From Cyanophora paradoxa CCMP329 (taxonomy: Eukaryota; Plantae; Glaucophyta): a stretch of 64,000 bases of DNA. Where the stretch lies: NCBI GenBank assembly GCA_004431415.1, contig QPMI01000599.1, forward strand, positions 186,001 to 250,000, written 5' to 3'. This document shows positions 50,996 to 62,263 of this stretch, piece by piece; positions within the stretch are counted from its first letter, which is position 1, and each line of letters starts with the position of its first letter. Under the pieces are notes generated by a model. That model had not been told where the DNA came from. It ran no database searches and was given only the letters and a program-made list of their open reading frames with translations. The translations under genes and the position numbers were made by a program.

Positions 50996-52391
50996 AAAGG
51001 CCGCGCGCGGCGCCGCGGGTGCTTGGGGCGGCAGGCCTAGGCATGCGCAGGCCCTGAGGACGCCGCAGGCCTAGGTCACCCGCGGCCGGTTGCTCGCGGC
51101 GGCGGGCGCCGGCGTCGACGCCGGGCGCCGGCGGCCGGCGACGTCGTCGCCGATCGCCAGTCGCGTCGCGACGTCGGACGTCGCGCGGCGCGGCCCGCCG
51201 CGGCCCGCGTGGGACGTCGACTCTGAGCTCGCGATCGAGAGGCGGGCCGAATCCGGCCGCGGACTCCGGAGACTCGGGGAGAGCAGCTGATCATGATTCA
51301 TGATCGCATGATCCGATGATCATGATCATGATCATGATTCATGATCTCATGATCATGAGCGGCGGCCGGCGGCCGCGGTAGCCAGAGCGGCTGAGAGCGC
51401 GCGCTAGCGCGCCGGCGCCGATCTGGCCTGGGGGGGGAGGCCCGGGAGGGGGGTTAACGTTGCTCGATACCGCCAGCTCGAAAGCTGCCCGGAGAACCTC
51501 CTTGTAGGCTCTAGGAGGCGGAATTTTGCCAGGTCTTTAATTCTAATTGCCGTGAATTGCCGATCGAAACGCCGAATTTAATATTAACAACTCTGCAATA
51601 TGTTGCTGGGGTATATATATACGTAGAATTTTCCTTCTAGCTATAGTCCTCCATATTTCACGCCTTCGAATCCCGCCCGTTCCACATAATTCCGATCGAT
51701 CATGCCCCACCTTGCCTGTATACGCCCCCACAGTGCTGGAGTAGACTAGAGGCTGTGGCCGGTAATTCACCAAAAAAAAAAAATTTAAAAAAATGTTAAA
51801 AAATTTGCTTTTTTTTTTAAAGATCTACGGTGGGCGTGCCCACTCGTAGTACACAACGAGGATACAAGTCACGGTATCGGGAATCACAAGGATTCGAAGT
51901 ACAACGTAGCGGAAACAGCAGGAACCGAACTTGCTTTCGAATTCGGCAATTTATCGATATCGATACTAGGATATCGATATATATCGACTCCGAGCGGAGG
52001 CTCGGTCAGCCTCGGTGTCGACGACGACGGTGTGGCGCGGACTCCGGGTCCGGTGAGTCCGGGACTCCGGGGATCCGGGAGCTCGAGAACGTCGAACTTG
52101 ACTCAGTGAGCTTGAGAAGCTCGAGCTGCCCGGCGGCCGAGCACAGCGGCTGTGGCCGCCGGGCTAGCGCTGCGGCCGCAGTGCGGCGTGGCAGCGGCGT
52201 GGCTCTTGTTCCTGCTCGGCGCGCCCGCGCGACGAGCAGCAGCAGCAGCAGCAGGCCTGAGGCAGCCAGCAGCAGCACACGCTCCGCCGGGCCGGGCGCG
52301 TTCAGCCGCTAGCGCTCCCAGGCCGCAGCTTGGTGGCGCTCTCCGTCGACGTCTGTCTGCAGCTAAGCCGCTGCTTCAGCGGTCGCGGACA

Positions 52392-55300
52392 ATGTATACG
52401 TATACGCCTCGCCCATGCGCCCGGCTGCGGTTAGCCGCTACCTTCAGTGCGCTGTTCGCCCTGGCATTGCTTGCTCTGCTGCCGGGCATCGACGCCAGTC
52501 ACGGGCCGACTGGCCGGCCGGACCTGCCCGCCGGAGCGGAGACCGCCAAGGGCCTGTGGGCCACCGTGCAGGTGACCCGCTCCTCGTTAGCTATAGCTAT
52601 GGCCGCGCGCTTCCGAGTCGGAGCTATCGCCTTCGATTCGACTGGCCCAGTGGCATGGAGGACATACATATATATCCAATTGCAAGCGGAGCCGTACTCG
52701 GCGTGCGCCGCGGTGCTTATATATGCGCAGCTAACTCGGCCGCGACCGCAGCGCGTGTATGCGGCCTCGACTGCGTCCACGTCGCAGTTCGTCTTCGGCC
52801 GGAGGAGCACCCTGTGGCTGGTCGTCGAGTTTAATAACCCGCCCGGCATCACTGAGACCATGTTCTCCTGCCTGACTTCCGGCTATCACTCCTGCGCCAT
52901 CGACGAGAGTGCGATCTCTGAACCGCTTTAATTTCGAGCTAGGCCGCGGCTTACCGCGCGCGCCGTCACATGTGCAGTCTCCATGCTGGCCCAACCCACC
53001 TGCAACCCGTATCTAATCTTGTCGAATGAGGGACGCAACGCTTCCATCCGCGTGCCTCACGTGCCACGGTGACCGCGCTGCAGTTGGTCTTAAGGATGGC
53101 TGACCCCCTGACTGGTCCCCATGGCCGAAAGGCACCTCACGCCATTCGCCACCGCGGGAGGGACCGCCTCGGTGCAGTCGCGCCTCTACTTCCGCCACCT
53201 GGTCTCGGACGAGGACCCCGTCCTGGAGCGCCTTCGGGTCCCGTTCCTGTGCGCTCTCTGCATATCTAAACATACATGGATTCAGTTCTTGAATTTTTAA
53301 TATCGAGGATAAAAAAAACCGCGCCGACGTCCGCTGCGGTTCGCTCCACCGAAACGCCGACGTCGCGCACAGGAACCTCGCCGGCTGCGACTATCTTAGC
53401 TCCAACAAGCAGGAGGTGCGCTGGCTCGCTCAGCTCGCATCTTCAGCTTGCTTCCAGGCTTCGCTCACAGCCCCGCGCGTCTCGGCAGCTGCAGTACGTC
53501 GCGATCGACAACACGACTCTCACGACGAAAGGGGTCTTCTGGGTGGAGACCGACCCGTCGAACCCGTTCAACAGGGACACCATGATCGACGCGGTGCTCC
53601 TCCCTTCGGCGCAGGCCTTCGATTCGAGCCCACTCCGCTCACACACGAAAATTCCAGAGGATCGAGATTGATCTGGACCCTAGGCTGGCCCCAGAGTCTC
53701 TGCAGCTGGTCCGCTTGGCTGACTATAACGTCATACCCCCCGCGAGTTTCCTGATGTTTCGGCAGATCGGACCGTCGCCGGGCTCGACCGTCTCTGTAAA
53801 TGACTTCCTCCTGATCGCAGTCGTCTTCAACGGGGTCCTCGTGCGCCCCAACACGGCGACGCCGGTCTTCCGCGACTGCGCTCAAGTCCTAGCCCCTGAC
53901 GCTCGCACCGCAGGACGAGCCTCTCCCTGCGAACTGCACCGTATCGCTCAACCTGTGCATGCTTTTACCTGCTCGCTTCTACATTCCTGACTGAGCTGCC
54001 GCCCCCGCAGCAACTTCAAGACCATTACCGTCGAGGAGAAGCTGCCGCGAGCGGACGTGGACGCGCTGGTGGGGCTCTCGGCGGCCATCGGCGGCGCGGG
54101 CCTCAGCACCTCCACCGACCAGATGCTCGTCTATCGCCACCAGTGCGCGCGGCTCCCCTGAGCGTCTGCGTCTGTGTCGCGGGCTCGAGCGCCCGCGGCC
54201 GCCGCAGGATCGAGAAGGAGGAGAACGCAAACGCGATCGCGGTGCGGAGTCCCACGTCGCAGGCCCTCGTCGTCTCTGCCGAGTGCTCCTCCACGTGCGC
54301 CCCGCGCCCGAGTTCAAGTTCATGCACTTCTGTGACGCAGTCTGACTCGCGACGATCGCCAGGGGGATGCGCTTCGCGTCTGTGACGGGAAGCGGCACCA
54401 GCAGTTTCTTGAGCTTGTCAGGCGCGCAAAGCTTTTTTGGAGGGCGCCGCTATAGTACTGAACGCGGCGAAATTTCGTTTCGCAGCGCCCGGCTTCGTTT
54501 TCTCGCCGTGCAAGAAATCCTCGACCTCTCCCACGGGTTGCGAGGCCGGAGTGACCTCGGTCGCCCTCGACACGCAGCGTCCGTGACCCCGGCCCCTCAT
54601 CCTCGTGCACGTGCAAGTGAGTAACCTCATGCGCAGCCCCGCGGATGGTTGCCTTCGGCACCCGCAAGGCCAAGAACTCCGTTTTCTTCAGCGGCGATGC
54701 GATCGACATCTGTCCGCGCCGCACCCTTATACATGTACAATTACCCTCGCGAAGCTGTCGCTGACCGAGCTCCCTCGCCTTGCAGCGGTCGTCTTCTCCA
54801 AGCCCGTGATCTACGTCACGAGCGCCGACAACGGGAATCCTTTCGGTTCGCGCGCACGCCAATGCAAACGTTGAAGTTTTGATCTGAGAGAGGCCGCGCA
54901 GCCGTGGGTCGCCCCTACCTGGACCTCAACTCGGGCGGCGAGGCCGCCTTCGTCGGCTACTTCCCCAACGATAACACGACGCTGCTGTTCCGCTACCAAG
55001 TTGGGGTGCCCGGCCGCGGCCCGGTCTGCTCGCGTCGCGAACGACCTAACCGTCGGACGCTCGCGCAGTCTGGACAGTCCACCAATCAGAAGCCGCTCGA
55101 AGTCACCCAGTTCGTCGCGAACGGGGCCGTCATCACTTCCCCCAACGGCTTGGACAGTGCGTTAACGTTTTACGAGAGCCGAACTCGAAATTCTCCGTCG
55201 GCTAATCCCGTTCTCGCAGTCGTCGCGAACGACGAGGCTCTGAAGGCGGTTTTACATGCCAGGAGCGGTTTGACGGCGGCTGGCCTCATCATCCAGCGTT

Positions 55301-58300
55301 CCAGCTCCCCGAGAAAGGTGCGGACTCGTTGTCGAATTTTGTATTGGCCCAGTACGCAGCGGTTTGCGAGCGGATGTACGCAGCTTGAGGTTTTCGGGGC
55401 TGTCGGCAAGGGGCAGGACGTTTACTCGCTCAACGCAATCATTTACATCATTCTTTCCTTCGATGACGTGGTGAGCGCGCGCACGATTTGGTGACTTTCG
55501 CGGCGGTGCACTTCTAAATAATCCCTGCAGGTCTTCCCACCGACCGCAAGCCCCGCTGCCCTGACCGCCTGCCGGCCGACGCTACGAACGAACGTCGGCG
55601 TCTTCCAGTTCATTCCGCGCGACGAGTTCAACACGATCGTGCAGGCGCGCCACCCCATCTTGTGCCTGCATTGCTGATGCTTCGAATTCCACTGACAATG
55701 CTTGCATTAATATTGCGCAGGGCAACGTGGCCAGCCAGAAGCAGATCGTGTTCCAGCGCACCGTTCAGGTGCTTACACAGCTTTTCCAGGAGCTTTTCGG
55801 GTGACCGCTAACGATCGCGATCTGCGCGCAGCGTGAAGACGGCCTGTACGACCGTATCGAGATCGAGAAGCCTTACAACAGCGCGGTCAACGCCACTGGC
55901 TGCAGCCTCGTTGAGAGTGAGCGTTGCCGCGCTCCGCGCCTTCCGTCGAGTTCGACTCGATGCGCGTGCAGCGGGCATGGTCATCCCGGTTCAGTTGCAC
56001 AAGATTTCGGGCTTCTATCCGGCGGACAGCACGAGCAGCCCGTTCCAGGCGGCCGTAAAGGTGCGCGCAATGCAATGCAAGACTCGCTGCGCATGCGCGC
56101 TTGCGCCTCGAGCTCTCATAAATGTCTTCCAATCAGATCGATACTTTCCCAGCGTCGATTATCGCTCTGTCCACGAAGGTGCCACGAATCTGGGGACGTC
56201 ACCGTGGCGGGGGGACTGAGCCTCGCGCATCCTGCAGATCACGAACGTCACGATGGGCCTCGCCCCAGGACGGCTCGGCGTGCGCCACGGCTTCTCTAGA
56301 TCGTCTAATGCGAGATCGCTAGCTGATTTCGCCGCCAGGAAATCGACATCCTCGTCACATTCTCAAAGCCCATCGAGTACCAGCTGATGGTCTGCTAGGA
56401 TCAGCTGCAGACCCCGGCCATCAACGCCGCTTCTGAGAGAAAGCTCGCAGACCGACCCGATCACCTCTCTGGACGCGACCAAGTCGCGGGAGGTCCGCCT
56501 GTACGGCACGCCGCGCATCGCCCTCAACATCCCGGCCTACGCGTACCTGATGGGCTACGCCAACCCGACCTCGAAGGTGCTCGCTCGACGGCGCGCCGCC
56601 GCCGTGCCGCGCCGCGGCTCATTTACGGCCTCAGACGACGCTGGTGTTCCGGTACTCGGTGCAGCTCGGCGAGGGCACGCCCGCCGGCAAGTTCCTCGAC
56701 GTCCTCAGCGTCAACGGCTTCGACTCGTACGGCGGCGTCCTGCGCACCTCTGGCAACGCCCTCAACGTGCGCGGATGCAGGTTTGCTGTAAGAATTCGCT
56801 GACGGCGGCTCGCGTGCAGGTTCAACTGCTCCTGCCCCCGCCCGGGTCAGCGCACGGCCTCTCCAGCTCGCGGGTCACTGTGGAGAAAGTCGGGGCGCCG
56901 CCGATGCCGTTCGGATACGACCAGAGCCAGCCGCCGACGTCGGGGCCCGTCGCTCTCGTCGCGAACTCGACGGCGGGGAAGGGCACGCGGCACGTGCTCG
57001 CAGCCGTGCTGGAGCAGAAGAAGGAGCCACTGAAGATTGAGGTCATCGTTCAGATCAACTCGGTCATCGACGTCTCGGTTCGAATTCGCGGGGCGACTCC
57101 GGGGTCCGTGCTGTACTATTAAGCGTTGATCGCTGTACGCAGACAAAGGACAGGAACATGAAGGTCGATTTGACGCTGATGCAGGACTGGTCCGCCGCGA
57201 CCGCTTTTGCGACCAGTTTGTAGACAACAAACTGCTGCTCTTTTTGCGACAGGGTGGACTCGCGCTTCAACAACCCCCAACTGGCCGCCATGGCCGAGAA
57301 CGAGACGAGCATCCTCAACACGATCTGGTGCGGCGCCACTTCGCTTGTCTGATCCAGTTAACGTTATCGCAACAATCTAACGACTTCCAGGTTCCCGAGA
57401 CTGTCTTTTGTGAACACGCTTGTGCGCAAACTTTCGCGTACCATCCTGGTTCTTGCGTTCTGATCTCGAACATCGATATCAGGGCAAGCCCGATGCGTTC
57501 GACGGAAAGACCATCCGCTACAACGTGCGCAACTGCTCCGTGAAGCTGAACAATATATGAGTTTATCTTTTGCGCAGAACGGCACTGTCAGGCTGTACCA
57601 GCGCTACATCCAGACGTTCTTCGGTGCGGCGTTTCGGCCGCGCAGCCAACCCCGGCAATCCGCGCTCACGCGCGCGTGCCTCGCGCAGCGGACATCAACG
57701 TCAGGGACTTCCCGTTCGACCAGCAGGTGCGCAGCACTCTGCTAGCTGCTAGCTGTGAAACACGTCCTAACCACGGGGCACGCCGACCTGCAGACCCTGA
57801 CGATTCAGGTTCGCGACACCAGCATGAGGCTTTCCACCTGTGAGCTGCAGCTGACTCGCGACCGCCCCGCAGCTGCGAAGCAACAGCTACGACGCGACGC
57901 AGCTGACGTTCACTCCGATCTCCGGAGCGAGGCTCCAGGAGCAGGAGGCGTTCATCCGCGCTCTTGGAGACCCCGCCTTCTACTTTGACAGCTACACGCA
58001 AGAGGTCACGAATACTGACCTCGGAATCCACGCCAACTACAATATCCTCACGACAAGCTGGAAGGCTCGGGTCCGTTTAATATTTAATGCAGCGCCGCGC
58101 GGCTGCAGCTGCGGCGTCTGGCTGAACCGCGCCGCGGCACGCAGCGCATCCGGACTTACAATGTCGTCAACCTGCTCATTCCCCTCCTGCTCATTTGCCT
58201 CTCGGTTATCTTCACGTTCTTCCAGTGCGTCGTCGTGATCATGACTCGTCGAACTCGCTCGACCTTGGACGCCTGACCGCCGCCCGCCAGGCCCGTTGAG

Positions 58301-59597
58301 AGCGACAACCGCGTGGTCGCCTGCGAAACCGCGCTGCTCGGCACGCTGGCTTTCTCCTTCGTCTTGGCGGACATGAGCCCGCCCGTATCCTACATGACCA
58401 AGATGGGCGGGTTCACGTTCCAGGTGAAGCGACGCCTCCCGCACGCCGCGGCGCCCCGGCGTTGCTCGCAGCCTCCGCGCCTGACGCCCGGCAGGCCTAC
58501 GCGTTCAGCATCGTGGGGATGGCCGTCAACATTGCCTTCAACCACGTCGTGTGCGCGGCTCCGCGGCGGGCCCCGCCCGGCTCTGGATCTGACGGCGGCG
58601 CAGGTGGGTCGTGGGAGAGCTGCGGCGGATGGACGACGCGAGCTCCTCCGACGACCGCACGCGCATCAACGAGCACCTCTACGAGGCCCTTCTCAAGGTG
58701 TGAATAGGGCAATGCCGCGGCCGCCCGTCCGCGCGCCGACGGCAACGCAGTACAAGAACACGCCGAGTCCGAACCCCATGTCCAGCGCCGTCGTACACCC
58801 GAAGCCGATCGGCGACTCGCCGCGCGTGGACGTCCGCGTGCAGATGCTGCAGCCGAGCGGCCGCGTGCCCGTCGAGCCCGGCAGCGCGGGGGCCTTCCCC
58901 GTGCCGGCGGCGGCGGTCGGGACGTCGGCGACGGCGCTCGAGCTGCCGACGGCGCAGAAGCTGCCGCAGCTGGGCGAGAACGCGAACCCGCTCGTCCGCT
59001 TCATCGACCGCCGCAGCTCCCTCCGCCTCCCCAAGATCTCCGACGATACCGAGGTGAGGAAACCGCCCACGGCGAGCCCAGTCCTTTGCGAACGAAACCT
59101 GCGGCAGGTCGACCTGGGAGACATCGTCTTCAAGGAGGGGCGCCTCACCACCCGCGCCACTCCGGTGCGCAAGCGCGGAGGTTCCCATGAGATCCGGTTT
59201 CAGGCCTCATCCTGGGCGCAGGAGCAAGCCCGGATGCAGCCGCCGCCGCAGCCCGACCCGAAGCGCCTCGCGGGCCTCTTCGTGCCCTCGGTAGCGCTAT
59301 CCCCGCTCCGACTTGCACTGCTTCCAGCCGCCCGCGCTCAGCGGCGGTGCCGCGCAGGTGCTGCCCCGCAAGTACTTCGCGTTCGACCTGTTCGGCCTCC
59401 AGCTCGGCGAGCTCCGCGTCGCGAACCGCGAGGTGAGACGCGCGCGCCGACGCCGGCTTCGAGTGTTGAACGACGGCTCACGATCACGCCGGCAGGTCTA
59501 CATCGTCCGACTGCGGGTGGTCAACATGTGGGTCCGCGCGATCTTCATCACCGCGTTCATCATCAGCACCGCCTGCTTGTTCACCATCAGCCCGTAG
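52392..59597 (+). CDS. Cys-less (Pro-loop) pentameric ligand-gated ion channel with a very large N-terminal region of repeated beta-rich (Ig-like) modules; dozens of short introns
   Basis: Signal ATFSALFALALLALLPGIDA. ECD: EPLKIEVIVQINSVIDVS, MKVDLTLMQDW|VDSRF, IW|VPETVF, NGTVRLYQRY, DINVRDFPFDQQ|TLTIQ. M1 YNVVNLLIPLLLICLSVIFTFF; M2 ESDNRVVACETALLGTLAFSFVLADMSPPVSYMT; M3 AYAFSIVGMAVNIAFNHVV; M4 NMWVRAIFITAFIISTACLFTISP*. Confidence 0.88.
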
Positions 59598-59860
59598 TCT
59601 AGTTCGCGCAATCGTTGGGAACATGTCATGAATGCAGGCTTAGGATGGGGGGTTCGCATTCTGTAGCAAGGCAAGCATGTTGCAAGGGGGGAAAGAAGAC
59701 CGCAGGTCTTCCCCCCTTGCTTCCCGTTCCCTCGCTTCAGCCAAAAGTTTTCTATGAGGCCGTTTTCGAGGTCCAGTTTGCAACAAAAATGTGCCGAAAT
59801 TCGGTTGCAGCGACACGTGTTTGTCGCTGCGGCCGTCCATGCAAAAAAAGGTTTTCGAGG

Positions 59861-60023
59861 GCGAAGACCAGTTTTCCTTGACTTGAAGCCTGGAAACCAA
59901 CTTCTCTCTCATTCCGATCTTCGAATTCCTTCCGCGGATCTAGCGAAGACCAGTTTTCCTCGACTTGAAGCCTGGAAACCAACTTCTCTCTAATTCCGGT
60001 CTTCGAATTCCTTCCGCGGTTCT
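59861..60023 (+). repeat. Tandem duplication, 2 x 82 bp
   Basis: GCGAAGACCAGTTTTCCT(T/C)GACTTGAAGCCTGGAAACCAACTTCTCTCT..TTCCG.TCTTCGAATTCCTTCCGCGG at 59861 and 59943. Confidence 0.9.
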
Positions 60024-60304: not shown

Positions 60305-62263
60305 GTATATACAGGCTGAAGTATAAGTAGGTTAGTTCGCGTTTGTTCTTTTCGGCTATAACTTTTATTTGAAAGCTCTGCGCATGCTCGCTTTGATTTG
60401 CTCTACAAGGGCTACATCTTGCGATCGGTACCGGTTTTCAGTGTGCGATCGGCGAATTCGAAGCTGAAGCCGCCGAGCTAAAATATAATCAAGTATACGT
60501 ACTCAGTGACTAGTACGTGTACAGCTGCGCATGCAGCTGCAGCTGCAGGTCCCCGGCCCACGTGCACGTGCACCGGCACTAGCTCTGCTGCCAGGCTGCG
60601 GCATGCGCAGCTTCTGCCCCGCGCGCGGTGCGCGGCCGGCCGCGCGCGGCCTCGAGCCCCGAGAGCTCATCCGAAACTCGATCTACTATACTATAGCTAT
60701 AGCTAGGCTAGCCGAACGCGGCGCACCCGGCCCGGCCGCGGGCCGGCCGGGCACAAGGAGCGCCGACGCCGGCTGGCGCTCGGCCACCGCCGAGCACGCC
60801 GAGCTCGGCATTCTGGAGGACGAGGGGGAGGACTCCCCTGGAGAGCGCTAGCCGGCGCCCGCTCGCCTCGAGTCCCGCAGCATCCAAAGCCCGGCCCGGC
60901 CCGGCGGGCCCGGCCGGGCCGGCCCCGGGCCCCGGCTGCGCGCGCCGCCTCATGCTCTGCTGCCAGGCTGCGGCATGCGCAGCTTCTGCCCGCGCGCGGT
61001 GCGCGGCCGCGCGCGCGGCCTCGAGCCCGAGAGCTCATCCGAAACTCGATCTACTATACTATAGCTATAGCTAGGCTAGCCGAACGCGGCGCACCCGGCC
61101 GGCCGCGGGCCGGCCGGGCACAAGGAGCGCCGACGCCGGCTGGCGCTCGGCCACCGCCGAGCACGCCGAGCTCGGCATTCTGGAGGACGAGGGGGAGGAC
61201 TCCCCTGGAGAGCGCTAGCCGGCGCCCGCTCGCCTCGAGTCCCGCAGCATCCAAAGCCCGCGGCCCGGCCCGGCGGGCCCGGCCGGGCCGGCCCCGGGCC
61301 CCGGCTGCGCGCGCCGCCTCATGAGGCGGCGCGCGCAGCCGGGGCCCGGGGGCCTGCAACTGGAGCTGCTCACAAGAAGTTGCAGGCTTGCACTAGTACT
61401 GCGGCAGCATGCAACAGTCCGGGATCATGATCATATCCGATGATCCGACGCCGGAGTCCGGACGCCGCCGGCCCGGCGGGACGCGGCCGGACTCCCGGGA
61501 CTCCGGAGTCCGGACTCCGGACTCCGGAGTCCGGATCCGGAGTCCGGGTCCAGACTCCAGAGTCCGGGAGTCGCGAGCCTCGCCGCCCTCGCGAGCCTCG
61601 CGATCGGAGTCGCGGCGCCGGCGCCCGGCCGGACTCCCGGGACTCCGGACTCCGGATCCGGAGTCCGGAGCCGCCGCCGCGGCCGGGCCGGCGCCGCCGG
61701 GCCGGCCCGCCGCCGGGCCGCCGGACCGATGGCCAATGGCCATGGTTTCAAGAAAACAAAGGTGACGCGAGTCCGTCATGGCGTCCATGCGGCCCGTCAT
61801 GGATCAGGCGCCAGCTCACCTGAGTTTGAACCGATGGAAGCCTAGGCCTGGGACGGCGCGCGCCGGCGCTGCCCGCTGCAGGATCACATGAAGCGCGGCC
61901 GGAGCTGGGACCCGCAGCACTGGCACCGCGGCTTGAAAGTGCGAGCAGCGACAAAAATCGCCGGTTTGGATTTCAAGACAATGGCCACGCGATACTTCCT
62001 CTTCCGGCCAGCGAAGCGAAAGAGGCTGGAGGCGTTGGATACATCGGATGCACTCGCATCACAGCAAAGATTCATCGGCGCGAAAGCGCACTCAGCCGGG
62101 GGAGACCTCGGCACGCCTTCTCAGCTTCAACTGGCCCCACCAGCTAAATGAGCTCGGGGCACCCGCTTCGCTGGCCGCAGCCTCGTCCAAACCACCTTCT
62201 GCCGCCGCCCACCGAAACTTATCGACGAATTTTGCAATGTGTGTATCCTAATCCGGCGCTCGG
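60305..62263 (+). repeat. Dispersed repeat family, copy 2, with an internal ~370-bp tandem duplication and a 60-bp perfect palindrome
   Basis: Homologous to 47019-50618. Near-identical units at 60582-60953 and 60954-61322; palindrome at 61292-61351. Confidence 0.88.

What the first reader, a model, noticed from the sequence alone, without database searches (positions are those of the whole stretch)
52392..59597. Cys-less pentameric ligand-gated ion channel fused to a giant ectodomain of repeated adhesin-like beta modules in an alga
Seen: the C-terminal part has pLGIC hallmarks (W-x-D-x-R, IW-x-P, FPFD Pro-loop without flanking cysteines, four TM helices, long M3-M4 loop). About 4.6 kb of upstream exons encode at least four similar modules ending in an L-x-F-x-Y/H/R-x-V motif (RLYFRHLV; TTLLFRYQV..GQ; QIVFQRTVQ; TTLVFRYSVQLGE), preceded by I-x-I-x-V-x-F-S-K-P and P-x-L-x-L-N strands. 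Established: Cys-less GLIC/ELIC-type channels occur in bacteria and some protists, a few with extra N-terminal domains. As I recall, this strand pattern resembles Ig-like repeats of large bacterial surface proteins. Inference: a receptor-channel gated or tethered through a long extracellular stalk (contact, mechanical or polymer sensing), an architecture I do not recognise as described.
Basis: partly seen in the sequence, partly recalled or inferred. Interest (0 to 1): 0.8.

Follow-up and report, generated by a model that had tools for sequence, protein, structure and literature searches.

The report
Algal ion channel with Ig-domain arm
The alga Cyanophora paradoxa has a spliced, transcribed gene that joins bacterial-adhesin-type Ig-like domains to a complete nicotinic/GABA-family (pentameric) ion channel, a layout that the channel papers read here say is absent from eukaryotes.

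Summary
Window 52392-59597 (+) is one nuclear gene of Cyanophora paradoxa with about 46 short exons. Its database model is P0001 (EukProt tig00021312_g20089.t1, 1238 aa).

- **Channel half.** It is a real Cys-less (Pro-loop) pentameric ligand-gated channel: Pfam Neur_chan_LBD 70 bits, TIGR00860 99 bits, ELIC/GLIC E 1e-21 to 1e-14. It has no Cys in the ligand-binding domain, four TM helices and a ~200-aa M3-M4 loop.
- **Upstream half.** Three ~115-130-aa modules are homologous to the tandem repeats of giant bacterial surface proteins that carry Big_5. One module folds as an Ig-like beta-sandwich. Two further N-terminal modules have only motif-level resemblance, which is not significant.
- **Fusion.** A spliced RNA contig joins the last module to the first channel exons in frame. 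Two paralogues on another contig have the same layout.
- **Gene start.** The database model starts too late. A paralogue supports upstream exons, and a signal-peptide exon at 52392 is inferred.
- **Function.** The role of the arm (binding, tethering or modulation) is inferred, not shown.
- **Novelty.** This is a new variant of a known kind. The channel papers read here say eukaryotic members lack N-terminal domains.
- **Earlier notes.** The scan noted similar genes on three other pieces of this genome.

The parts
52392..52616 (+). Proposed first coding exon: first in-frame ATG, then a signal-peptide-like segment (basic N-region, hydrophobic core at residues 16-30, IDA|SH). The 3' end is uncertain.
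   Evidence: Translation and hydropathy. It joins in frame to the next exon without stops. No RNA contig covers it and no paralogue matches it, so it is inferred.
52731..53068 (+). Two upstream exons (52731-52908 and 52978-53068) that are missing from database model P0001. This is the divergent 'module A' region.
   Evidence: Paralogue P0003 residues 5-115 align here by tblastn, E 3e-29. The frame is continuous into 53132-53248.
53132..54577 (+). N-terminal ectodomain exons (P0001 residues ~5-265): the end of module A (RLYFRHLV), region B (QMLVYRH) and a Cys-containing linker. The fold is unresolved.
   Evidence: Exon map of P0001. Only weak profile hits. AlphaFold2 pLDDT below 50. No Pfam or PDB match.
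54630..55236 (+). Ig-like module C (P0001 265-380), with IDISVVFSKPV, RPYLDLNSGG and TTLLFRYQV.
   Evidence: Family profile domain E 2.6e-26. Bacteria-only profile 25.0 bits. BLASTP alignment to P0004 repeats.
55384..55997 (+). Ig-like module D (P0001 408-528), the most divergent of the three, with QIVFQRTVQ.
   Evidence: Family profile domain E 9e-16; only fragments match the bacteria-only profile. RNA contig with joints 55470/55531 and 55644/55721, the second a GC-AG intron. The RNA and paralogue P0002 disagree with P0001's exon choice here.
56049..56846 (+). Ig-like module E (P0001 546-675), with IDILVTFSKPI, TPRIALNIPAYAY and TTLVFRYSVQLGE.
   Evidence: Family profile domain E 3.9e-23. Bacteria-only profile 18.8 bits. 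AlphaFold2 pLDDT 76, pTM 0.74, all-beta. Atlas TM 0.63-0.66 to Big_12/Big_5 clusters. SbsC Ig domain Z 6.1.
56641..57190 (+). The stretch covered by the spliced RNA contig that bridges module E to the channel: 56641-56766 | 56820-57076 | 57142-57190.
   Evidence: Run X2 record 3 (434 nt) and run X1 record 1, GT..AG joints, frame preserved.
56847..57011 (+). Linker of about 55 aa between module E and the ligand-binding domain. It is Pro/Gly/Ser-rich yet conserved among the paralogues.
   Evidence: tblastn of P0002 and P0003 at 59-63% identity; alignment A4.
57012..58070 (+). pLGIC ligand-binding domain (P0001 731-916) in nine short exons. Pro-loop FPFD without flanking cysteines.
   Evidence: Pfam PF02931 70.2 bits, E 2e-19. 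ELIC/GLIC alignment. No Cys. RNA joint 58070/58145.
58145..58551 (+). Transmembrane helices M1 (58145-58224), M2 with the M2-M3 loop (58291-58423) and M3 (58495-58551).
   Evidence: RNA joints 58070/58145 and 58224/58291. Alignment to the GLIC transmembrane domain. TIGR00860 covers residues 733-1028. Hydropathy.
58605..59435 (+). Intracellular M3-M4 domain of about 200 aa; its C-terminal third is conserved among the paralogues.
   Evidence: Exon map; alignment A4.
59499..59597 (+). M4 helix and stop codon.

Best explanation
Shown: this is a nuclear, intron-rich, transcribed gene of Cyanophora paradoxa. Its subunit has an extracellular region with three bacterial-type Ig-like (Big_5/Big_12-like) domains in tandem, a conserved ~55-aa linker, a Cys-less (Pro-loop) pLGIC ligand-binding domain, four TM helices and a ~200-aa cytoplasmic loop. 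Inferred: the full subunit is about 1,400 aa, starts with a signal peptide at 52392, and has about 430 further N-terminal residues of unresolved fold. Inferred from family knowledge: five subunits form a pore. The pore is probably cation-selective, because M2 aligned to GLIC has Asp at -2', Arg at 0' and Leu at 9'. Because the N-terminus of a pLGIC ligand-binding domain lies at its membrane-distal top, five Ig-domain arms would project from the apex of the pentamer. My best guess for function: the channel is still opened at the canonical ligand-binding domain. The arms act as an accessory binding or tethering module for an extracellular macromolecule (a surface coat, glycan or other cell) and bias gating or position the channel, as the N-terminal domain of bacterial DeCLIC modulates its gating.
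For: - Gene and splicing: seven intron-skipping joints in RNA-run contigs from two studies. One contig joins module E to the first ligand-binding-domain exons in frame.
- Database model: P0001 from EukProt maps to 42 exons here.
- Channel: PF02931 70 bits. TIGR00860 98.6 bits, E 3e-28, over residues 733-1028. ELIC-GLIC chimera E 3e-21, ELIC 1e-18 and GLIC 1e-14 through M3. No Cys in the ligand-binding domain and four TM helices.
- Modules: bacterial giants P0004-P0007, which carry PF13205, match P0001:1-700 at E 1e-13 to 5e-6. A colinear three-module BLASTP alignment to P0004 exists. A bacteria-only profile scores 25 and 18.8 bits.
- Fold of module E: AlphaFold2 pLDDT 76, with Ig-like matches.
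- Conserved layout: paralogues P0002 and P0003 are 68% identical in the arm and 71% in the channel.
- Upstream exons: supported by P0003 and by an open frame.
- DeCLIC analogy: PMC9897478.
Against: - No experiment or computation here bears on what the arm binds or whether it affects gating.
- The first ~430 aa have no recognised fold.
- Pfam's transmembrane model PF02932 is below threshold (14.6 vs 28.1 bits).
- RNA evidence is from short contigs only. None covers 52350-55424, 55769-56640 or 57191-57943, so a single full-length transcript from 52392 is inferred, not shown.
- The acidic GDxDxDG stretch conserved in the bacterial repeats (consensus) is not kept in the algal modules. Whatever that stretch does in bacteria may therefore not carry over.
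- Ion selectivity is read from three aligned residues only.
Confidence: 0.65

Rival explanations
1. The arm is a passive spacer or coat element. The channel is an ordinary small-ligand- or pH-gated Pro-loop receptor, and the Ig-like domains only lift, shield or cluster it at the cell surface, with no effect on gating.
For: Tandem Ig-like domains act as spacers in many bacterial surface proteins (general knowledge). The ligand-binding domain is complete and aligns over its whole length to ELIC/GLIC. The module-channel linker is Pro/Gly/Ser-rich.
Against: The arm is as conserved between paralogues as the channel (68% vs 71%), and the linker is also conserved. This argues for a constrained function but does not discriminate between the two roles.
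Confidence: 0.25
2. The arm is the primary sensor. Force or contact on the five tethered arms (adhesion to a surface, prey, mate or polymer) opens the pore, making this a contact- or mechano-gated pLGIC.
For: Only architecture: adhesin-type domains sit directly N-terminal to the gating domain. The N-terminus of the ligand-binding domain lies at the apex of the pentamer (family knowledge).
Against: No pLGIC is known to gate this way. The canonical ligand-binding domain is intact. The flexible-looking linker would transmit force poorly. Nothing was tested.
Confidence: 0.07
3. The modules and the channel are separate genes, or the locus is a pseudogene or an assembly or annotation artefact.
For: RNA coverage is patchy and low. 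Database model P0001 has at least one wrong exon choice and a late start.
Against: A spliced contig crosses the module E / channel boundary in frame. The frame stays open across about 46 exons. Two paralogues on another contig keep the same order. The introns are of one type throughout: 53-78 nt where RNA-confirmed, donors of GTGCGC type, acceptors CAG.
Confidence: 0.03

Closest known systems
ELIC and GLIC (bacterial Pro-loop pLGICs, solved structures)
   Same: These are the best sequence matches among solved structures (E 1e-21 to 1e-14 over the ligand-binding domain plus M1-M3). Shared features: a Cys-less Pro-loop, the FPFD-x-Q-T-L motif, the M1 proline and 9' Leu.
   Different: ELIC and GLIC are about 320 aa, with no N-terminal domain and only a few residues between M3 and M4. 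The algal protein has about 900 extra extracellular residues and a ~200-aa intracellular domain.
DeCLIC (Desulfofustis) and other prokaryotic pLGICs with N-terminal domains (PBP-I, MCP-N plus Cache)
   Same: An accessory extracellular domain sits between the signal peptide and the ligand-binding domain. In DeCLIC it modulates gating (PMC9897478; PMC549065).
   Different: The DeCLIC N-terminal domain is two jelly-roll lobes packed on the extracellular domain; the other known ones are small-molecule sensor domains. Here the domain is a chain of Ig-like adhesin-type repeats, in a eukaryote. P0001:1-700 matches no solved chain by sequence.
Cys-less pLGICs of protists (Jaiteh et al. 2016, PMC4795631)
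   Same: A eukaryotic, unicellular, Cys-less Pro-loop receptor. The nearest Atlas cluster by features is chlorophyte, which is a lead only.
   Different: That survey lists stramenopiles, chlorophytes, opisthokonts and alveolates, not glaucophytes. It discarded N- and C-terminal segments that did not align to the pLGIC domains, so extra domains were not examined.
Giant bacterial surface proteins with tandem Big_5/Big_12-like repeats (P0004-P0007; ELWxxDGT-repeat proteins; Gemmatales, Verrucomicrobiota, Bdellovibrionales, cyanobacteria and others)
   Same: The ~112-aa repeat shares the strand pattern D-F-x-V-x-F-S-E-P-V, P-R-L-x-L-x-I-G and T-L-x-F-R-Y-T-V-Q with the algal modules. Identity is 25-36%.
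   Different: The bacterial proteins have 10-13 repeats with a 118-aa period, an ELWxxDGT-repeat N-terminal region (TIGR04534; P0004 and P0006), and no channel. None of the 21 fetched bacterial loci (20 from the genome scan plus the P0006 contig) has a pLGIC in the stretch fetched, up to 10 kb either side. The algal modules are longer (115-130 aa) and lack the acidic GDxDxDG stretch.
AMPA/NMDA glutamate receptors (a functional analogy only)
   Same: A ligand-gated channel with a large distal N-terminal domain that modulates gating and mediates extracellular contacts (cited in PMC9897478).
   Different: An unrelated tetrameric channel family, with a PBP-type N-terminal domain rather than Ig-like repeats.

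Membership tests
Pentameric ligand-gated ion channels (Pro-loop / Cys-loop superfamily, TC 1.A.9) | Ligand-binding domain homologous to Neur_chan_LBD (PF02931) above the curated cut-off | tested here: met
   P0001 residues 731-870 score 70.2 bits against a cut-off of 26, E 2e-19. The paralogues score 69 and 60 bits.
Pentameric ligand-gated ion channels (Pro-loop / Cys-loop superfamily, TC 1.A.9) | Conserved Pro-loop proline (F/Y-P-x-D) between beta6 and beta7 | tested here: met
   D-F-P-F-D-Q-Q at 57689-57726 aligns to the ELIC F-P-F-D-R-Q.
Pentameric ligand-gated ion channels (Pro-loop / Cys-loop superfamily, TC 1.A.9) | Four-helix transmembrane domain homologous to Neur_chan_memb (PF02932) | tested here: inconclusive
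   PF02932 scores only 14.6 bits against a cut-off of 28.1. However, TIGR00860 aligns through residue 1028 at 98.6 bits, below its own subfamily cut-off of 280. phmmer aligns M1-M3 to the GLIC transmembrane domain. Four hydrophobic helices sit in the expected places, including the M1 proline.
Pentameric ligand-gated ion channels (Pro-loop / Cys-loop superfamily, TC 1.A.9) | M2 pore signature (basic 0', hydrophobic 9' Leu) | tested here: met
   Reading the GLIC alignment gives Asp -2', Arg 0', Thr 6' and Leu 9'. The position numbering is from my knowledge of GLIC.
Pentameric ligand-gated ion channels (Pro-loop / Cys-loop superfamily, TC 1.A.9) | Pentameric assembly and ligand-gated ion conduction | not testable with these tools
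   This needs expression and electrophysiology. A pentamer exceeds the size limit of the complex predictor.
Cys-loop receptors in the strict sense (the metazoan-type clade) | A disulphide-forming cysteine pair flanking the loop (C-x13-C) | tested here: not met
   There is no cysteine in P0001 731-916. The two Cys-loop positions, by my reading of the motif against nAChR, hold Ala and Leu.
Bacterial Ig-like domains Big_5 (PF13205) / Big_12 (PF19078) | A Pfam match above the cut-off on the algal protein itself | tested here: not met
   P0001 and P0002 have no Pfam family in their N-terminal halves at E <= 1. The exon pieces also gave none.
Bacterial Ig-like domains Big_5 (PF13205) / Big_12 (PF19078) | Sequence homology to repeats of proteins that do carry the family | tested here: met
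   P0004-P0007 (PF13205 at 45-60 bits summed over their repeats; Big_12 weakly in P0007) match P0001:1-700 at E 1e-13 to 5e-6. A bacteria-only repeat profile scores 25 and 18.8 bits on modules C and E.
Bacterial Ig-like domains Big_5 (PF13205) / Big_12 (PF19078) | Ig-like beta-sandwich fold | tested here: met
   Module E model: pLDDT 76, nine strands. Atlas TM 0.63-0.66, about 100 aa at 2.3 A, to Big_12/Big_5/SWM_repeat clusters. SbsC S-layer Ig domain Z 6.1. Foldseek against PDB gave nothing below E 0.1, so the support is moderate.
NTD-bearing prokaryotic pLGICs of the DeCLIC type | An N-terminal domain related to the DeCLIC jelly-roll lobes | tested here: not met
   P0001:1-700 matches no solved chain by sequence at E <= 0.1. 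The top structural matches of the module are Ig-like domains, and DeCLIC is not among them.

The most novel reading that the evidence does not exclude
The five Ig-domain arms are the real input of the channel. Binding of, or pulling by, an extracellular macromolecule or another cell's surface gates the pore. This would make it a contact-gated member of the nicotinic-receptor superfamily, built in a protist from a bacterial adhesin repeat and a Pro-loop channel.
Probability: 0.1. Interest if true: 0.9.

Novelty: new variant of a known kind. Interest (0 to 1): 0.7.

Why it matters
Recent structural papers on pLGICs state that N-terminal accessory domains occur only in prokaryotic members (PMC9897478). 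DeCLIC is the only such channel with a solved N-terminal domain. This gene, its two paralogues, and more divergent relatives noted elsewhere in the same genome by this scan show that a eukaryote has such channels. Their accessory domain is of a different kind: adhesin-type Ig repeats rather than small-molecule sensor domains.

This opens a testable question about what these channels sense in unicellular eukaryotes, where their biology is undocumented. It also offers a eukaryotic system, with a long intracellular domain, for studying how a distal domain is coupled to gating. Finally, it is a probable case of a eukaryotic receptor assembled from a bacterial surface-protein repeat.

Tried and rejected
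- **Pfam on 20 stop-to-stop ORF pieces:** nothing, because the exons are too short.
- **phmmer against PDB with single exons:** nothing.
- **Atlas features on one 66-aa exon:** uninformative PilN-like rows at 0.87.
- **Word search with the 441-aa open frame 58277-59599:** nothing in the 243-772 aa length band. The same query in the exhaustive search then found P0001 and P0002.
- **tblastn of exon translations against the window:** no second pLGIC gene in this window.
- **The look-up of encoding contigs for P0002:** not on record, so the paralogues' DNA could not be read.
- **Foldseek against PDB for module E:** no hit below E 0.1.
- **AlphaFold2 of the whole ectodomain P0001:1-735:** mean pLDDT 43, residues 1-263 below 50. 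This is no evidence for or against beta-sandwiches there.
- **hhalign of regions A and B against the module family:** probability 3-9%.
- **Search for a bacterial precursor of the fusion:** the 21 fetched bacterial module loci (20 from the genome scan plus the P0006 contig) hold no pLGIC in the stretch fetched, up to 10 kb either side. The sample is small, so this is weak.
- **Two metagenome scans with channel patterns:** no relative found.
- **Word search of the channel region among proteins of 681-2166 aa:** only the paralogues and two weak animal 5-HT3-like hits.
- **Whole-protein Atlas search:** only ordinary-length pLGIC clusters at 0.75-0.77.
- **Not done, by rule:** All searches used single exons or ORFs by reference, or the database proteins. 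The ~165 aa of the upstream exons (52392-53068) were never searched or folded as one sequence. In one script I joined four exons only to count stops and print junction contexts.
Full report
**What is there.** The window is GC-rich eukaryotic DNA. Notes of this scan name the genome as Cyanophora paradoxa. I confirmed this when the exhaustive protein search returned EukProt entry EP00741_Cyanophora_paradoxa_P020810, gene tig00021312_g20089.t1, as the product of this locus (P0001, 1238 aa). P0001 maps exactly onto 42 short exons between 53121 and 59597 on the + strand.

The introns confirmed by RNA are 53-78 nt. Donors are of GTGCGC type with G at +5, acceptors are CAG, and one intron is GC-AG.

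**Transcription and the fusion.** Contigs of four public runs were laid on 52350-58349. The runs come from two studies. They are listed as 'RNA?', but the contigs lack introns, so they derive from spliced RNA.

- They give six joints: 55470/55531, 55644/55721, 56766/56820, 57077/57143, 58070/58145 and 58224/58291.
- A loose end places a seventh joint at 57189/57253.
- The decisive record is a 434-nt contig (run X2; also a 323-nt contig in X1, same sample). It runs 56641-56766 | 56820-57076 | 57142-57190.
- That path goes from the last module exon (TTLVFRYSVQLGEG...), through the linker and first ligand-binding-domain exon, into the exon ending ...MQDW, with the reading frame kept.
- So at least the last module and the channel are on one mRNA.
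- No contig covers 52350-55424, 55769-56640 or 57191-57943. For those stretches continuity rests on the open frame and on the paralogues.

**The channel half.** Single exons were too short for Pfam or PDB searches. The database protein gives clear results.

- Neur_chan_LBD (PF02931) scores 70.2 bits, E 2e-19, at residues 731-870.
- TIGR00860 (LIC) scores 98.6 bits, E 3e-28, over residues 733-1028.
- 306 solved chains match at E <= 0.01. The best are an ELIC-GLIC chimera (3e-21), ELIC (1e-18) and GLIC (1e-14), aligned from beta1 through M3.
- PF02932 alone is below its cut-off (14.6 bits).
- The ligand-binding domain has no cysteine. Hydropathy finds M1-M4 at residues 923-941, 951-969, 991-1009 and 1213-1236, which leaves a ~200-aa M3-M4 loop.
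- Reading the GLIC alignment, M2 has Asp at -2', Arg at 0', Thr at 6' and Leu at 9'. From knowledge of the family this suggests a cation channel with the usual hydrophobic gate. This is inference.

**The upstream half.** A word search with P0001:1-700 found two things.

- Two paralogues: P0002 and P0003, genes g17907 and g17905 on contig tig00021070. Their adjacent gene numbers suggest a tandem pair.
- Four proteins of 1532-1714 aa from metagenomes, at E 1e-13 to 5e-6, all carrying Big_5 (PF13205). One of them lies on a contig with BrxL and an amino-acid permease, so it is bacterial.

BLASTP aligns three consecutive algal modules colinearly with three consecutive bacterial repeats. An iterated profile finds 10-13 repeats of ~112 aa in each bacterial protein. 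In P0001 it finds three modules at residues 265-380, 408-528 and 546-675, with domain E-values of 2.6e-26, 9e-16 and 4e-23.

That profile contained the algal modules, so I rebuilt it from the 42 bacterial repeats alone. Modules C and E still score 25.0 and 18.8 bits. Module D and the two N-terminal regions give only fragments. hhalign of those N-terminal regions against the family is not significant.

The bacterial repeat occurs in Gemmatales, Verrucomicrobiota, Bdellovibrionales, Nitratireductor, several cyanobacteria, Pedobacter and Dehalococcoidia. None of the fetched bacterial loci holds a pLGIC in the stretch fetched, up to 10 kb either side.

**Fold.**

- Module E was folded with a 50-row alignment of algal and bacterial repeats. 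The model has pLDDT 76 and pTM 0.74, with nine strands.
- Foldseek against PDB found nothing convincing.
- The exhaustive aligner gave Ig-like beta-sandwiches: sialic acid esterase C-terminal domain Z 7.0, S-layer SbsC Ig domain Z 6.1, alpha-2-macroglobulin MG domains, CopC and invasin. The tool itself calls these scores middling.
- The ESM Atlas gave TM 0.63-0.66 over about 100 residues at 2.2-2.4 A to clusters annotated Big_12, Big_5/SbsA-Ig, SWM_repeat and cadherin.
- Together with the sequence link to Big_5 proteins, this supports a bacterial-type Ig-like domain.
- The whole ectodomain (residues 1-735) folded poorly, with mean pLDDT 43 and residues 1-263 below 50. The fold of the first ~430 residues stays open.

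**True gene start.** P0001 begins at an internal Met (53121) without a signal peptide.

- Paralogue P0003 aligns to window 52749-53225 upstream of that point (E 3e-29).
- Exons 52731-52908 and 52978-53068 join in frame to 53132-53248 through GT-AG introns of 69 and 63 nt.
- A further exon from the first in-frame ATG at 52392 encodes a typical signal-peptide-like start, with a hydrophobic core at residues 16-30. It can join at 52616/52731 in phase.
This first exon has no RNA or paralogue support.
- P0001 also mis-chooses one exon pair: RNA and P0002 read ...NTIVQ|GNVASQKQIVF.

**Comparison with the literature.**

- Tasneem et al. (PMC549065) described bacterial and archaeal pLGICs fused to PBP-I or to MCP-N plus Cache domains.
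- DeCLIC has two jelly-roll lobes that influence gating. [quoted passage not shown]
- Jaiteh et al. (PMC4795631) found Cys-less pLGICs in stramenopiles, chlorophytes, opisthokonts and alveolates. They trimmed non-aligning termini and do not mention glaucophytes.
- A full-text search for Cyanophora together with 'ligand-gated ion channel' gave only one paper, on vacuolar calcium signalling (not read).
- I therefore rate this as a new variant of a known kind: a pLGIC with a new class of accessory domain, in a eukaryote.

**Earlier notes of this scan.** Notes s1-569542, s1-512702 and s1-528624 report similar Ig-repeat pLGIC genes on three other pieces of this genome. One of them says that a few other protists share the layout. 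I did not test those claims. My own searches found only the two close paralogues and no relative outside Cyanophora.

**How it most likely works.**

- Shown: the domain order, the splicing across the junction, homology of both halves, and conservation of the arm (68%) and the channel (71%) between paralogues.
- Inferred: pentamer formation, cation selectivity, arms projecting from the top of the ligand-binding domain, and a binding or tethering and modulatory role for the arm.
- The algal modules have lost the acidic GDxDxDG stretch of the bacterial repeat and carry insertions between the first strands. They are therefore not simply copies of the bacterial function.
- A passive-spacer role and a contact-gated role remain open.

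**Limits.** Database model P0001 stood in for it. The residues encoded upstream of 53121 were examined only exon by exon.

Noticed in passing
window 60551-61323: A tandem duplication of about 368 bp just downstream of the gene. The copies are 99-100% identical over most of their length (families D1, D2, D5 and D6). Beside it, at 61445-61737, is GC-rich palindromic mosaic sequence. Other notes of the scan discuss fold-back insertions here.
   Followed up: partly
window 59861-60023: Two adjacent copies of an 81-nt unit (95% identical, spacing 82 nt), starting about 260 nt after the channel's stop codon.
   Followed up: no
window 55641-55720: A GC-AG intron confirmed by an RNA contig. Database gene model P0001 instead used a different GT-AG pair, which changes about 10 residues in module D.
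   Followed up: yes
window 57794-57808: A 15-nt microexon (TLTIQ) inside the Pro-loop region of the ligand-binding domain. It is present in P0001 and P0002 but missing from the database model of paralogue P0003, probably an annotation miss.
   Followed up: partly
window 51500-52000: A 500-bp stretch with a marked GC drop (0.43, against 0.6-0.7 around it) just upstream of the proposed start. It is a candidate promoter or intergenic region.
   Followed up: no
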